DNA of 64,000 nt from Podarcis erhardii. Taxonomy: Eukaryota. Shown here piece after piece: positions 26,239-64,000 of this stretch (its first letter is position 1; the number at the start of each line of letters is the position of its first letter). The notes beneath the pieces are model-generated. The model made no database searches. It worked only from the letters and a program-made list of their open reading frames with translations, and was not told the origin of the DNA. The stretch lies in assembly GCA_964252035.1 (NCBI GenBank), contig CAXUOO010000144.1; one strand, given 5' to 3'. The position numbers and the translations under genes are program-made.

Positions 26239-26790
26239 CGTATATGTGCTTTTGATGTTCCTCGTTACTTTTTGTGTATAATGCACGATGTCNNNNNNNN
26301 NNNNNNNNNNNNNNNNNNNNNNNNNNNNNNNNNNNNNNNNNNNNNNNNNNNNNNNNNNNNNNNNNNNNNNNNNNNNNNNNNNNNNNNNNNNNNNNNNNNN
26401 NNNNNNNNNNNNNNNNNNNNAAATGTGGACATTTCCTTTACGCTTATGTGTGATGATCTAGATTCATAAAAATACCTTTTGGACAGCTAATTGAGTCTCG
26501 AAGACGTTCTCAGCTTTTGCTGTTCATCTTCTCCTTCCTCTTTCTAAATATTTCTATAGATCGAGTATTTATAATCACGCCGATTCTAGATATATATATA
26601 TATATATATACGTATTCATAATAAGTAGAGAATTGTGAAAAACAATCAGACAAATGCGTATTCACATATGAACACGCTAGGTATGCATGTATCTATGTGG
26701 AGTTTCTACTTTGTCTTAAAACATATATATATATATATATATACACTGTATTTATTGAAAACATATTCAGGAGCGTCTTTCCCCGTTTGT

Positions 26791-53279: not shown

Positions 53280-53413
53280 NNNNNNNNNNNNNNNNNNNNN
53301 NNNNNNNNNNNNNNNNNNNNNNNNNNNNNNNNNNNNNNNNNNNNNNNNNNNNNNNNNNNNNNNNNNNNNNNNNNNNNNNNNNNNNNNNNNNNNNNNNNNN
53401 NNNNNNNNNNNNN
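53280..53413. other. Assembly gap (N run)
   Basis: Run of n. Confidence 1.
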
Positions 53414-57061: not shown

Positions 57062-60000
57062 TCACAACGTTTGTCCAACAACGCTGAACCACCTGGAGAC
57101 AAGCTGCTGCAGCCAATGACCTTCAATGGCAGTTACACATCGCAAATACGGCTTAGTAGTTTGAACGTACTCGCTGTACACGACATACCTGAAACAAATC
57201 AAACACACAAGACATGGCAAAAATACCGAAAAAAGACTTGCTCCTTTACGATCGCATATACACGCGGAGTTTTCCGCGAAAAGACATATACACAGATGCC
57301 GCAATTCACGGACTTACTGGGGAAGCGGTAATTTTCCAAAAACCCCGGAAGATGGATGAATCTTTGCAGTGAGACGATCTACCTGCGTTCATCCGCAATT
57401 ATAATACACGAGAAATTGATTACGGCACTGCAGGTTTTGTTGACACGCGTAGCCACTGTGCAGTCTCAAATAGCATACTGAAAATGAAAGCAGCCACAGG
57501 AGCAGCTCCTTACTGCAGTCATATAGGTAGATCCATCTCGCTGGAGTCGGGCACTACGGAGCCAGCAGCCAGCCGCCAGGCATTGCCTGATAGATGCCCA
57601 ATTGTTCTGCGAATCTCCTTTGTGCAAAAACTCCGTAACGTTGAGAATTAGCTTCATCAAATCTTCAAGCTGACTACGAATTAGCGCTGCCCGTTTGAGA
57701 GCATTATGATGTAAGCCATGTTCTTTGCAAAAACCGACTTTATCATGTGCCTGCGTATTCAACGTCAAACAGCAAAACGAAGGCCAGCACAGACAGCTGT
57801 CAATCAAGAATCGAGATATAAACACACACTCAACCGCGAAAAAATGTCGGCTAACCTCTTCCCACTTCATGTACGCATTCAATAGCGTGAGATGATCGCT
57901 CTGGTCATTAATGAGCTGCAGCCTCGCTTCGGAACGTTTGCGCTCATCCTTTCCTGAAATCACAAACAGGCATCAATATATATATAGATGATCTCGTTTT
58001 TTTTTCCACCCTTGGGTCACAGAATTCTTACTCCCCTAGCTTACATTTTTTTCACATTTCTCTCATAAGTATAAATGAATGTGCATACGACTACACGTCT
58101 AATCAAATAAGAAATCAACCGCGTTTTTTTGTCTAGCCACTTGGAGTCATATTTTGTTTTACTTTCCTCCTGAGCATAGATGAATGCTATACGACAACAC
58201 GTCTAGCACCCTCACCTTGTGGCCTTGTACAAGACCACAAAGAGTCCGTTGAAAGCATTGCGATGATAGTAAGGATTTCTGGTGTGCAAGAAAAATTGAT
58301 CGACTCCAGTAACAATTTTCCCATAATTGGCGCCAGCGGCAATGAGGCAAGTCTCCGGCTGAATATGCATGGTGTACACACGTACACATAATTAAACAAA
58401 CATAACTGTTCCACGCATGTAACAGATTCTCAATAATATATCTTTCCGAAACATATTCACTTGACAAAGATTGTTACCGGCAAATGCTAAAGCTGCTCAT
58501 TCGATATCACGTACCCTAATGCGGTGAGCTTTCCGCAAGAATCAAGCGCTTCAAGCCGGTGAAGCTCGCGGCCCGCGTTGAAAAGTGCCTCATTAGATGG
58601 AGGGTCGAGAAATGGAAATTCGGAAGGATCTTCAATTCCCAAAGCCTGAAGCGTCCAGTGTGAGTTAACGCGGTGCATACACCACAAACACGGGCGGGAG
58701 GGAAATTTATGACTTCAGTTCCTGGTAACACGCTGGCGCAAATAATATCAACTGCGCATAAAAGCTACTTTGATGATGGCTAACATTACTAACCGGTTGT
58801 AAGTCTCGCTGAACTAGTCTTGTTTATGAGAATATACGTCTCTCTTCCTCATTTACCTTCAATTCAAGGTAAACGCCTCCTAGATTGGCTCCAAGAATTT
58901 CTGGCACCCGTCGTGGCACAAAAGCGTTGAATGTATCCTCGGTGTACAACCTAAAAACCTTCCCTAAAAAATAATTGGAATAAATAAGGGAATATCTAGT
59001 TCTTCGCACTGCGTCGTAACAGCAGACTCACTACTATGGGAGGATGTGTGAGGCCAGAAGATAGATACAGAAAAGATAGTCATCGTCAAAAGCCGTCAGG
59101 TTGAATGACTGCGAGCGCTCTATGCTATCATCATATTTGATTGACGTTACAGATGTAAAACATAATTAGCTTGTCTTCTGCGGGGTATATCCAAATTTTT
59201 TTGTGTGATTCCTCCTCGACCGTTACTACAACACGGCTTGAGCGTTCATTCACGACCGTGCACTTCACATAACTGCACTGCATATTAGCAAATACATGAC
59301 TCTTTTACATAAGAGCGTGATTGAACAATCGTACGTATGGGCATGCACGCAACCCCTTCAGATTCGCATGCAACACGACAGATGTATGTATGCTCCTACG
59401 TCTTTGAATGTACGTGAGAGCATAACTTTCCGAGCTTACTGTCTCCCAGCTGTTAAGGTAGCGGATGCAAGATTCGGCAAAAAAGTCAGCTTACCGGGAG
59501 CTTCTCTGCCTGCCCTTCCAGCACGCTGAAGTGCAGCATCCTTCGAAATTTCTTCAACAACGAGGGCCTCAGCTCCCGTTCTGTGATTGACTTTTTTGTT
59601 TTTTTCCAAACCCGTATCTACTACATAACGTATGCCAGGAACGGTAATGGAAGTCTCTGCTATATTCGTAGCCAGAATGATCTACGTACATATCATCGCA
59701 AGAGTGAAAAAGGAAGTCGACAGCACACAAGCTCGGAAGACCGTACAATAACATGCATATCATTGAGATGAAGCGTTAACAGTCAACGCATACAGACAAG
59801 GCGGAAAACACCATTCCAATATTTTGAGTTTGGCTGGTATGAATTTTATATATTGATTTCTGCTTGCGTGCTGCTTTTTGCTCAAAGAAAACTTTTGATG
59901 TATATAGTCAAAAATAACGAACAATGTTTACGCTAAACGTCAACTCGTTAAGGCTACACGTCTACTGATGACAAATGTTCCCTATATATATATGTATATA

Positions 60001-61394
60001 TATATATATGGATATATGTGAATTTACACATTCGAGATAGTTACAAATTCCAAGCAAATACTTCGTAACAGTCACCCGAACGTGGCTCCTCCATCGTATG
60101 CGTTCCTTTGACGACTACGGCTCTCAGACCTTAAGGGATTCAGATCGACGTGAACGTACTCTAGATTGAGAATTTTCGTTTTTCGAAATGGAATATACTC
60201 TGCGTCCACGTGTATAGAAACACACTATGCATATAAACCCACCATATGTGTATGTGTGCGCAAAAACTTCGTATACTCACCTGCATCTGCGTCTAGCTAG
60301 TACAAATTAGGCCACCATAGTCAAAGAGAGCGAAACATACACATTGTAAAGCAGTTGCTTTAGCAGATATGTAGCACAGAGGAACTGCCAAAGTAGCTAA
60401 AAAACGATCCAGTTGTTGGGTGCTCGCGCCGCTTCCTGTATTCACGATTGATTTTTACAAAAATACTTATGGACACAGCGGATGTACGTGACAACGAATA
60501 CAAAGGGAAAAAATCTCCATGTGCCTATAGTACTTGTGAAAAGTTTGCGGCTTGGAAAACGAGGAATGAAAATGGAGACAAGCGAAAAAAAAAGTCACAG
60601 AGCACGAGAGAACCAGCAGCAAGACAATATGCGACGCCCGGCAGCTTCAGTATATATCTATTATCGTCGTGTAACTACGACAAATACTTTTAAGTCATAA
60701 ATGTATCTAAATTGATAAATACCTTTCGGATTCCTTTCGGCGGTGGCTCGAACACAAGTTTCTGCTGGTTGAAAGGCAGTGCCGCGAACAATGTACATAT
60801 TACAAATTCCACGGTTCGTGCATTTCGCATATACGTCTTGTCTCCAATTCGCAAACACAACTGCGCCGCTTGCATACATGACTCGTTTTTATCGTTACAC
60901 AACCCTCCAGTGGAACAACTGGGCTGCTGTCGTGCGGTTTCTGCGGATTGCGTGACAAAACTGGCAGCATCAGTAGCAACGGAAGTCAGCTGCTGCTTCG
61001 CTTTTTTCGCAAGCGCAAGTGCAGCAGCATTTCTTAACAGTTTTCTCTTTTCCTCCAACAATCCCTGTAAACCTTCTATATCATCTTGTCCAGGTAAAAA
61101 GATGAGAATATCTCCAGAAGGGAAAGTGGCGTGAATCTGCATCGCCGCTATGTAGGCTGCCTGTAGTTCGTTGTCACGGAGCATGTCACAAAAACAGAAA
61201 GAAGAGGCGGCTTGAAAAGAGAAGTAGAGCCGCGATTTGCTACAGCAAGAGCGTATAAGACTTATCGCATTGCTTACTTGACTAGAGAATTATGTGAAAA
61301 AGACATTCTTCGCATCCTTACCATTCACGAGTACGCAAGCCCTTGTGTTAGAAACTGCCACGTGTGCACAGCTAAATTTCTGCACGAATAACTA

Positions 61395-61432
<38 letters not shown>

Positions 61433-63335
61433 AATGGTTCGATAGATCGTCATGTTACAGAAGATACTTCCTGCATTTTTGCGTAGATATACAGAAAAAA
61501 AAGAAGTAGATTTTTACTGCTCAGATCAGATTGTACGCGAACGGCAACAAGAAAATCTACAGCCTAGAGAGGTTTGAACTGAATTGTAAGCATACCTCAA
61601 CGTAATCTTCTTCGGGTGCAGGGGTGTAGAAGAGCTCCACTGGGAACTGCCTGCCTGGGATATTCAGCGTAGCCACTTGCGGAAAGAAGGATTGCAACTT
61701 TGCGCAGTCGAGGGCAGCAGACATAAGCAAGACTTTCAAATCCGAGCGCTTCTGCAGCAAAAGCTTCACCAAACCGAGCAGCACATCCGTGCGTACAGAA
61801 CGTTCGTGCACTTCATCGAGGATGAGTACTGAGTAGTGAGAAAGTAGAGGATCTCGTATGGCCTCTCTCAACAGCAAACCGTCTGTCACGTACTTGATGC
61901 GTGTTCTGGGACTGCATTTTTCCTCAAAACGCACAGCGTACCCCACTGTCTCTCCTACAGGCAGACAGTGCATTTCTTCTGCTACACGCCGAGCCAACGA
62001 TACCGCTGCTACACGACGCGGCTGAGTAATTCCTATATATTTCAAGTTTGCAACATTGTCGAGCTATGCAAGCGCTTCTCAGTTTGCAGATACGGTGAAA
62101 CAGACAGTGATGCCCACTATCAACGTCACTTGGTGCTGCATCACTGTCTGTTTCACCGTATCTGCAAACTGAAGAATTGGCAGCTTCTGTCTACTTGACA
62201 TAGATCGACAAATGTCCTTAGCGGTCGCCGAAATTTCTCCTCCGTGTGCTGCACCTTCCACTGCAGCGCCACCTCCTGTAGTAGTGGTTTGTCTGTGCAA
62301 AGAATGAGCTGCATGCGGTTCTGACGGCGCCTTTTTCGAAAAAGAAGCTGCAGCTGCAGCTGTCGCAGCTGAGCCACGAGTGTTCCATGGGCGCCGAGAA
62401 AATGGAGCGGCAGAAACTTTGGCAGTTGCTGACACTTGAGCTGTGTGATGATTGGGTGTTTCGTGAGAGTTTTTCAACCTACGCTTTTCACTGCAGCAGA
62501 GGAACCAAGTCATGATCTCGACTTCTATCATAATCTGCAGCTGCACCTTCTCGGTGAGGCATTAACCTAATCCTGCCGTCAATTGTTTCGGCTTTGTTTG
62601 AGTCGGTGCGGCCGCTGTCATTGTCCCTTCTGCTGTGCCTGTTTGCTCCTTGCTTTCCCGTGCTGCTGCTGTTATTTGTGCTGCTATCGCATAAAAATGT
62701 CACCAACGGCACCCACAGCAGCACCAGAAGCAATGGATTTGAACTCTGCAGCAGCAGATGCTTTGCAGTGAGTTGAGCTCCTGGAATCATCAACGGAACT
62801 CTGAGAATCACGTTTGTCATCAAAACTGATCTTTCTACGAAGTTCAGTGCTCTCAGAGGACGTAGCATTACTAGCGTCCTAAATTGACTATTTGTCCAAG
62901 TTCTTGTTCCTCATCCGCTGCCGGGAACGAGAGAAAGTTCAAGGACGAAGAGTTGACTGTGCGAGTAGCCCGACGCTTTCCCTTCTGTGAAACAGTGTCA
63001 TCGTAAGAAGAAGACACCGCTCTTTCCGTTCGCGAGAGTGGGCGACACGAAATTTCTTGGCAAAAAGCCGTTTGTCCTTCAGAAGAAAGAGAGGAAGATT
63101 TCGTTGTGCAAGCAGACTTTTCTGGAAAAACAAAAGATTCAGATTTTTTTTTCGCAGAGGACAATTCTTTGCGGTTGAACGTGGTAAAAAGCTTTTTCTT
63201 CTGACAAAGAGGACTTATTTCTTGATCATACGAAAGATCCCTACCTTCCTTATGTAAACAAGGTTGCCCACATCCGCGATCTTCTGTTTCCGCCCATGCT
63301 TCCTTCAAAAGATACTCTTTCAGAAGCGTCGCCAT
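57062..63335 (-). CDS. DEAH/RHA-family RNA helicase (DHX33/Dhr2-like); disrupted in this sequence (motif I missing, N-terminal frame breaks)
   Basis: Exons 62063-61596 ([21 protein letters not shown]), 61160-60723 ([14 protein letters not shown]), 59681-59495 ([19 protein letters not shown]), 58963-58857, 58645-58515, 58358-58216, 57953-57856, 57750-57514, 57382-57318 and 57188-57062, all in matching phase, including HA2- and OB-fold-like C-terminal parts. GETGSGKT is absent. Confidence 0.93.
62079..62172. repeat. Perfect 35-bp inverted repeat with a 24-nt spacer
   Basis: 62079-62113 TCAGTTTGCAGATACGGTGAAACAGACAGTGATGC is the exact reverse complement of 62138-62172. Confidence 0.98.
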
Positions 63336-64000
63336 TTCGGGCAATAAGAAAAACTTATGCTGCAGAATGTGTTGGAAAAAGGCTTGAGAGGAAGTGTTTC
63401 AACAACTTGTCAACGTATTAGCAGTGGGAACGCACAAATGAAAAAGTGAAAACGGTTTAGTCATTGTGTTCCAACAACAATAAATTGGCAGCAGAAGGAA
63501 GTTCATTTTCTAAAAACAAAAAACTGCATTGCTAATAAAGATGGTGAAGTGTTAATTAAGATGCGTTGCCGCTGTGCACCGTGATCTTGTGAACAAATAT
63601 AGAAACTTCCGTAAACATTGACGAGGAAAAGATATATGTATTGGTCTAAGAAACATTTGACGATAACCAGCGATCATATAATTAACTCTGCGGCAACGTT
63701 CATCACTTCACTGAAGTTCACAAAGCAAAACATACTGCCGACAACAAAGAGTTACTCTCTGAAAATGCTACTGCAATCGCCACAAACGGGAAAAGCTACG
63801 ATTCCTGTACCAGCGAACCCGGACGCCCGAAAGAGAATCGATTGTATTTCATTTTGAGCTCGACGAGCATGAACCTACAAAGTATTCTACCATTCTCTGA
63901 CAGCTTTAACCTGCACGGCAAAAATCGAAAATCTGTTATACCGGAAAAAAGGATTCAAAGTTAAATATTCCCTACAATTTGTTCTATTTCGTAATTCCCT

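What the first reader, a model, noticed from the sequence alone, without database searches (positions are those of the whole stretch)
62064..62172. Perfect fold-back inversion replaces the helicase P-loop (Walker A)
Seen: the coding strand runs ..[24 protein letters not shown], where ETGSGKT should follow. Instead, the next 35 nt are the exact reverse complement of the 35 nt encoding (L)[11 protein letters not shown](Q) just upstream, creating a 35-bp stem with a 24-nt loop and a TGA stop. The sequence then resumes in what looks like an intron 3' end (ctgagaagcgcttgcatag) before an intact 468-nt exon, and the return junction shows ctga/gaag microhomology. Motif I, the rest of that exon and its donor site are lost. 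Established: inversion plus deletion with microhomology is the signature of replication template switching and also of chimeras from whole-genome amplification. Inference: either a real, very recent null or pseudo-helicase allele of a normally important ribosome-biogenesis/RNA helicase, or an assembly artefact.
Basis: partly seen in the sequence, partly recalled or inferred. Interest (0 to 1): 0.72.

Follow-up and report, generated by a model that had tools for sequence, protein, structure and literature searches.

The report
Assembly-only hairpin in parasite helicase gene
The perfect hairpin that wipes out the ATP-binding loop of this helicase gene exists in the assembled sequence, but independent read-based contigs of the same organism and of two relatives carry a normal, intact loop there, so it is almost certainly an error patch in the assembly and not a dead gene.

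Summary
It has a perfect 35-nt inverted repeat (62079-62113 / 62138-62172, 24-nt loop) where a minus-strand DEAH-box helicase should encode motif I, and it brings in two in-frame stops.

The biological reading does not hold. A contig built from public reads of the same organism (X1) matches the window exactly in both flanks and spans the site with a different, non-palindromic sequence. Contigs of a related organism from two other studies (X3, X6) do the same. X3 reads LIVGETGSGKSTQVPQLVLQLDNV, which has the same length as the window, stays in frame and has no intron.

There was no deletion and no intron. The distance from motif I to TQPRR is 29 residues, as in relatives.

The window also differs from all read contigs by four one-base homopolymer indels within 0.8 kb upstream. 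Applying them opens 429 codons with no stop, against 12 stops as assembled. The fold-back therefore sits in a low-quality consensus patch.

The scaffold belongs to a coccidian-like parasite co-assembled with a lizard host at low depth; earlier notes of this scan reached the same conclusion on other pieces of the genome.

Verdict: assembly or library artefact (about 0.8). A rare real template-switch variant cannot be excluded (about 0.12). Low interest.

The parts
62138..62172 (-). Original arm: genuine coding sequence for (L)[11 protein letters not shown](Q), upstream of motif I
   Evidence: arm; translation. The orthologous wording LPIHGFADAIRAAV in Besnoitia and LPVLQYETAIEDAV in Cystoisospora is shown.
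62114..62137 (-). Loop of the hairpin: genuine coding sequence for HQVTLIVG, the strand that leads into the P-loop
   Evidence: X1 shows no difference here and X3 shows one substitution at 62136.
62079..62113 (-). Inverted copy: exact reverse complement of 62138-62172. It occupies the place of the codons for ETGSGKSTQ.PQ and reads [10 protein letters not shown].
   Evidence: In one search table 3, all 17 X1 substitutions that are shown fall at 62071-62112, together with four X1 indels (62076-62090), and X3 shows nearly the same differences. The rebuilt X3 sequence reads GETGSGKSTQVPQLV.
62064..62078 (-). Aberrant tail after the arm, with a second stop (TAG, 62066-64). It is partly a continuation of the inverted copy (AGAA, if one A is skipped) and partly true sequence (GCTTG..CAT) lacking two bases.
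   Evidence: alignment to the continued inverted copy. (X1 and X3 differences at 62066-62079). The X6 contig leaves the window exactly at 62065/62066 (table 7).
61596..62063 (-). Rest of exon 1: motif Ia TQPRR, motif II DEVH, motif III written SAA, ending at a GT donor at 61595
   Evidence: DHX15/Prp43, E = 4e-51; alignment with relatives.
62173..63335 (-). N-terminal part of exon 1 (start codon near 63335). In the window it is broken by four one-base homopolymer indels at 62484, 62504, 62698 and 62878.
   Evidence: table 4: X1, X2 and X3 agree against the window wherever they cover a site (all three at three sites, X1 and X3 at 62698); homopolymer context; with these four differences the frame is open for 429 codons with 0 stops, against 12 stops as assembled.
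57068..61184 (-). Remaining exons of the helicase: RecA2 with TNIAETS and [10 protein letters not shown]2 winged-helix and ratchet, OB fold. All are present and collinear.
   Evidence: open stretches; tblastn of Besnoitia XP_029217573.1, residues 241-934; Pfam Helicase_C, HA2_N, HA2_C, OB_NTP_bind.

Best explanation
The fold-back is an error confined to this assembly. The true gene of this organism is an intact DEAH/RHA RNA helicase. Its first exon is one open frame of about 580 codons and encodes a normal P-loop (GETGSGKS) at this place.

The window belongs to a coccidian-like parasite that was co-assembled with its lizard host at low depth. Across about 0.8 kb (62066-62878) the consensus rests on poor evidence, most likely one or very few error-prone or chimeric molecules that polishing did not correct. 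That patch carries four homopolymer-length errors and one fold-back.

The fold-back itself is a polymerase or software template switch. Synthesis (or local reassembly) reached ...LIVG, copied about 35-39 nt of the opposite strand of the sequence just made, and then returned close to the right position, so the total length was kept.

Shown: the palindrome, the intact version in independent read contigs, the extra frameshifts, and the preserved length.
Inferred: the source of the error (library or amplification chimera, or an assembler or polisher step) and the low-coverage cause.
For: (1): X1 carries the same organism label and holds 91% of the sampled words. It has 0 differences to the window over 60000-61385 and 63500-64000. 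Its single 2118-nt contig spans 61440-63523. All 17 of its 25 substitutions that the table shows fall at 62071-62112, and four of its 11 indels at 62076-62090.
(2): X3 (different organism label, different study) spans 62029-62588. Rebuilt from the tables, it reads LIVGETGSGKSTQVPQLVLQLDN, with the same 71 nt as the window over 62055-62125 and in frame with [18 protein letters not shown]6 (a third study) leaves the window exactly at 62065/62066, and its overhang equals the X3 sequence apart from one letter. The rows shown for X1 read LIVGETGS..KSTQMPQLVH..LDN.
(3) table 4: four one-base indels at T4, CC, A5/T and CC runs separate the window from the read contigs, which agree wherever they cover (three sites X1, X2 and X3; 62698 X1 and X3). 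Applying them removes all 12 stops and opens 429 codons.
(4) Outside the fold-back, X1 has at most 8 substitutions against at least 4 indels. That ratio is typical of consensus error, not of divergence.
(5): every other exon and motif is intact.
(6): the length is preserved and there is no intron.
(7) Low k-mer depth (2.7-3.8) in X1. Best named relatives are the coccidia Besnoitia and Cystoisospora, and earlier notes of the scan describe a parasite co-assembled with a wall lizard.
Against: Only Logan contigs could be laid, not raw reads. Contigs show that the intact form is present, not that the fold-back form is absent. The contigs are of low depth (2.7-3.9).

The X1 sequence could not be rebuilt completely, because three of its indel rows were not displayed. 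The rows shown leave it 2 nt short, so its in-frame state is inferred from X3.

It is not known whether X1 is the sample the assembly was made from.

A replacement that keeps the length needs two switches. That is the hallmark of genuine short template-switch mutations, and it is not what simple one-junction amplification chimeras give.

The sequencing platform and assembly method are unknown to me.
Confidence: 0.8

Rival explanations
1. It is a real but rare in-vivo template-switch mutation. One parasite cell or a minority clone in the sampled host carried a short replication template switch that overwrote the P-loop codons. The low-coverage assembly happened to take its consensus from that molecule. 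The neighbouring homopolymer indels are ordinary sequencing errors of the same read.
For: The geometry fits the four-point template-switch model. A segment is replaced by the reverse complement of adjacent sequence, the length is kept, and a perfect hairpin is made in one step (model in PMC5453318 and PMC8794818). Contigs drop rare variants, so cannot exclude a minority allele.
Against: There is no positive evidence that any read other than those behind the assembly carries it. The lesion sits in a patch with four other errors, so that stretch of consensus is untrustworthy in general. A null in a conserved DEAH helicase would be strongly selected against in the haploid stages of an apicomplexan; this rests on general knowledge and was not tested here.
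Confidence: 0.12
2. It is a fixed pseudogene or null helicase allele in the assembled parasite strain. The gene is decaying, with a fold-back plus four frameshifts, and X1 is a different strain with the functional gene.
For: There are five disabling lesions in one exon of the window.
Against: X1 is identical to the window over 1.9 kb of flanks, including introns, which leaves no time for five independent lesions. Outside the fold-back, indels equal or outnumber substitutions. All other exons and motifs are intact. No second copy and no displaced motif I is present in the window.
Confidence: 0.03
3. It is a functional hairpin, for example a regulatory RNA or DNA structure or a programmed element placed in the gene.
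For: The structure is very stable: -46 kcal/mol, z = -13.
Against: It is absent from the same organism's read contigs and from relatives. It destroys an essential motif and brings in two stops. Rfam finds nothing.
Confidence: 0.01

Closest known systems
Inverted chimeras of whole-genome (multiple displacement) amplification and similar fold-back library artefacts (Lasken and Stockwell 2007, PMC1855051)
   Same: A stretch is joined to the reverse complement of sequence a few tens of bases away on the same molecule, with little or no homology at the junction. Such events are found only in the data set that carries them.
   Different: The abstract read describes inverted sequences with intervening deletions, and priming at 2-21 complementary bases in over 70% of junctions. 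Here the sequence switches back after 35-39 nt and the length is kept. The first junction shares only 1 base. Whether the sample was amplified is unknown.
Short template-switch mutations in replication (four-point model; Loytynoja and Goldman 2017, PMC5453318; hairpin creation, PMC8794818)
   Same: A segment is replaced by a reverse-complement copy of neighbouring sequence. This gives a cluster of apparent substitutions and indels and a perfect hairpin in one event, with the length kept.
   Different: A genuine mutation should be present in independent reads of the organism. Here the same-organism contig and two relatives carry the unswitched sequence, and the site lies in a patch of other consensus errors.
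DEAH/RHA RNA helicases (DHX15/Prp43 are the best solved relatives; coccidian 'helicase' proteins B. besnoiti XP_029217573.1 and C. suis XP_067926734.1 are the best named relatives)
   Same: Motifs Ia, II, V and VI, the HA2 and OB domains, the LPI...VTLIVG lead-in and the 29-residue spacing to TQPRR all match. Motif I is present in the read contigs.
   Different: The window's letters lack motif I. They also read DEVH where five aligned relatives have DEAH or DESH, and SAA where those relatives have SAT. The N-terminal 400 residues are lineage-specific. The subfamily was not resolved here; it looks DHX33-like by motif wording from my own knowledge.

Membership tests
DEAH/RHA helicase (the gene) | Motif I / Walker A GxTGSGK[ST] | tested here: met
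   Absent from the window's letters. Present at this position in read contigs: X3 reads GETGSGKS in full and X1 reads GETGS..KS from the rows shown.
DEAH/RHA helicase (the gene) | Motif Ia TQPRR and motif II DExH | tested here: met
   ITQPRRVAA and LDEVHERS lie in 61596-62063. The V in DEVH is unusual among the relatives aligned.
DEAH/RHA helicase (the gene) | Motif III SAT | tested here: not met
   The window reads MSAALD, while all five aligned relatives read MSATLD. Whether this is real or another consensus error could not be checked; one search lists no row there, but not all rows were shown.
DEAH/RHA helicase (the gene) | RecA2 motifs V and VI, plus HA2 winged-helix, ratchet and OB-fold C-terminal domains | tested here: met
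   TNIAETS and QRAGRAGR. Pfam Helicase_C, HA2_C and OB_NTP_bind pass their cut-offs, and HA2_N falls just below. The gene is collinear with the Besnoitia protein to its last residue.
Genuine template-switch mutation | The new segment is the reverse complement of nearby sequence, and the ancestral state is known from outgroups | tested here: met
   (35/35 complementary). X3 and X6 give the unswitched state.
Genuine template-switch mutation | Present in the organism's DNA in data independent of the assembly | tested here: not met
   The X1 contig of the same organism spans the site without it. This rests on contigs only, so a minority allele is not excluded.
Amplification or library fold-back chimera | Inverted join to nearby sequence on the same molecule with short microhomology | tested here: inconclusive
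   The inverted, nearby origin is met. Microhomology is 1 nt at the first junction and 3-4 nt at the return only if a one-base slip is allowed. The return to the original strand is not typical.
Amplification or library fold-back chimera | Sample amplified, or chimeric reads visible in the raw data | not testable with these tools
   Run records are coded, and only Logan contigs could be laid.

The most novel reading that the evidence does not exclude
The fold-back is a real in-vivo short template-switch mutation, caught in a single parasite genome or a minority clone inside the host. It would be a one-step, length-preserving overwrite of a helicase P-loop that creates a 35-bp perfect hairpin in coding sequence.
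Probability: 0.12. Interest if true: 0.3.

Novelty: not a real feature. Interest (0 to 1): 0.08.

Why it matters
As biology it matters little. The parasite's helicase is intact, so there is no pseudo-helicase or null allele to explain.

As quality control it is useful. It shows that scaffolds of the co-assembled coccidian-like parasite contain patches with frame-breaking consensus errors and at least one palindromic artefact. Apparent pseudogenes, frameshifts or lost catalytic motifs on these scaffolds should therefore be checked against reads before they are interpreted. The DEVH and SAA wordings in this same gene are examples.

Tried and rejected
Both flanks share one frame, the spacing from motif I to TQPRR is 29 residues as in relatives, and the Besnoitia protein aligns straight through the site.

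(2) Fetching the real contig DNA:
- The word search with the species-specific N-terminal piece found nothing.
- The word search with the exon found only relatives of 63% identity or less in the allowed length range.
- The exhaustive representative search gave at most 65% identity, so no protein of the same or a sister species is public.
- An exact look-up of the exon-2 ORF found no record.
The intact sequence therefore had to be rebuilt from the tables. X3 was rebuilt in full; X1 remains 2 nt short because three of its indel rows were not displayed.

(3) Displaced motif I or a paralogue in the window: none.

(4) Known RNA family at the hairpin or anywhere in the window: none.

(5) Other fold-backs of this kind in the window: none. 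All other long inverted repeats are (TA)n tracts.

(8) The paper search for parasite contamination in lizard assemblies gave nothing specific.

Full report
**What is in the window**

The window holds a perfect inverted repeat. Its arms are 62079-62113 and 62138-62172, 35 nt each and 100% complementary, with 24 nt between them. Every other inverted repeat of comparable length in the 64 kb is a (TA)n tract. From base composition, about 1e-13 such repeats are expected by chance. As single-stranded DNA the stretch folds at -46 kcal/mol, z = -13.

The gene is on the minus strand. One frame reads ...[28 protein letters not shown], then [14 protein letters not shown], then [30 protein letters not shown]...EEDYVE, followed by a GT donor at 61595. 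The right arm and the loop are genuine coding sequence. The left arm stands where motif I should be.

**What the gene is**

The 156-residue stretch 61596-62063 matches DEAH/RHA helicases; DHX15/Prp43 are the best solved relatives, E = 4e-51. Downstream exons carry TNIAETS and QRAGRAGR and the Helicase_C, HA2 and OB_NTP_bind domains.

The best named relatives in an exhaustive search are coccidian helicases of Besnoitia besnoiti and Cystoisospora suis, at 62% identity. An unnamed Logan protein reaches 65%, and nothing is closer. The Besnoitia protein aligns collinearly from its residue 241 to its end over 62183-57068. The first aligned piece runs straight through the fold-back.

**No deletion and no intron**

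In about 150 relatives the distance from the first G of GETGSGKT to TQPRR peaks at 28-30 residues. In the window, counting through the aberrant codons, it is 29. Both flanks are in the same frame. About 37-47 nt were therefore replaced by the same number of nt inside a single long exon.

**Independent data**

One search for public runs gave X1, labelled organism A, which holds 91% of the sampled words. It also gave several runs labelled organism B, which hold 5-14%. All were available only as Logan contigs. I laid X1, X2, X3 and X6, from four different studies, on 60000-64000.

- **X1.** It is identical to the window over 60000-61385 and 63500-64000. One 2118-nt contig spans 61440-63523. All 17 of its substitutions that the table shows fall at 62071-62112, and four of its indels at 62076-62090. 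These are the left arm and the 13 nt after it.
- **X3.** One contig spans 62029-62588 and shows almost the same differences.
- **X6.** One contig runs along the window up to 62065 and then continues with letters that equal the X3 version apart from one letter.

I rebuilt the sequences from the tables. X3 has exactly the window's length over 62055-62125 and reads LIVGETGSGKSTQVPQLVLQLDN, a canonical P-loop in frame with the rest of the exon. From the rows shown, X1 reads LIVGETGS, KSTQMPQLVH and LDN in three successive frames and is 2 nt short. Three of its indel rows were not displayed, so its in-frame state is an inference. No copy of the missing segment and no other motif I lies elsewhere in the window.

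**The fold-back sits in a bad patch**

One search also lists one-base indels at 62484 (+T), 62504 (+C), 62698 (-1) and 62878 (-1). At each site the read contigs that cover it agree against the window: X1, X2 and X3 at three sites, X1 and X3 at 62698. All four lie at short homopolymers.

Applied together in a script, they turn the frame upstream of LIVG from 12 stops into 429 open codons, which include a start at MATLLKEY near 63335. The true first exon is therefore one open frame of about 580 codons. The window breaks it five times within 0.8 kb, while 1.9 kb of flanks are letter-perfect against X1.

Outside the fold-back, X1 differs from the window by at most 8 substitutions and at least 4 indels. 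That ratio points to consensus error, not to divergence or gene decay.

**Context**

Earlier notes of this scan describe the genome as a wall lizard with a co-assembled coccidian parasite. My own data agree:
- GC is 39%, with many (TA)n tracts and short introns.
- The conserved helicase exon is no more than 65% identical to anything public.
- The best named hits are coccidian.
- The k-mer depth in X1 is low, 2.7-3.8.
- Relatives a few per cent diverged (most pieces 90-99% alike) occur at low depth in runs labelled with another organism.

A parasite present at a small fraction of host coverage is exactly where a consensus can rest on one or two molecules.

**Mechanism**

What is shown is that the assembly's letters switch strand after ...GTGGG. 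They copy 35 nt of the complement of the sequence just read; the copy extends to 39 nt if one A of a run is skipped. They then rejoin the true sequence near GCTTG..CAT with two bases missing.

What is inferred is the agent. I consider a chimeric or fold-back molecule from library preparation or amplification (PMC1855051), or a local reassembly or polishing step at a coverage hole, most likely: about 0.8 together.

The preserved length needs a switch there and back. That is the signature of genuine short template-switch mutations (PMC5453318, PMC8794818). I therefore keep about 0.12 for a real but rare variant caught in a single molecule. A fixed null or pseudogene allele (about 0.03) is contradicted by X1, and a functional hairpin (about 0.01) has nothing in its favour.

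**Limits**

- Only contigs could be laid, not raw reads. They prove that the intact form is present, not that the fold-back form is absent.
- Contig depths are low.
- It is not known whether X1 is the assembly's own sample.
- The X1 sequence could not be rebuilt completely.

**Verdict**

The biological interpretation is not: this is not a real feature of the organism's gene. Interest is low, apart from the warning it gives about consensus quality on the parasite scaffolds of this assembly.

Noticed in passing
window 1-64000: The whole window looks like a scaffold of a coccidian-like apicomplexan parasite, not of the lizard host. GC is 39%, (TA)n tracts are abundant, introns are 0.3-1 kb, and the helicase's best named relatives are Besnoitia and Cystoisospora at 62% identity. 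Nothing public is closer than 65%, so the parasite lineage seems to have no public proteome. Related sequence, a few per cent diverged (most pieces 90-99% alike), occurs at low depth in runs labelled with a second organism from three other studies, so relatives of this parasite appear to be widespread.
   Followed up: partly
window 62484, 62504, 62698, 62878: Four one-base homopolymer indels separate the window from all the read contigs that cover them. Each shifts the helicase frame, and together they hide a first exon of about 580 codons. Apparent frameshifts elsewhere on this parasite's scaffolds deserve the same check.
   Followed up: yes
window 61713-61715 and about 61812-61814 (minus strand): The helicase reads SAA where all five aligned relatives read SAT (motif III), and DEVH where they read DEAH or DESH. 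These may be real lineage-specific changes in the motifs that couple ATP hydrolysis to unwinding, or further consensus errors.
   Followed up: no
window 62200-63335 (minus strand): The N-terminal 400 or so residues of the helicase are low-complexity (runs of A, S and T) and have no detectable relatives. This is typical of apicomplexan lineage-specific extensions.
   Followed up: partly
window 12688-12832, 26293-26420, 53280-53413: There are three N runs of 145, 128 and 134 letters. All three sit in the AT-rich, (TA)n-rich parts of the window. They were left untouched.
   Followed up: no
window 180-842 (+): An open frame of 220 residues with WD40 repeats (Pfam E = 5e-31) lies at the left edge of the window. 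It is probably an exon of a beta-propeller protein.
   Followed up: no
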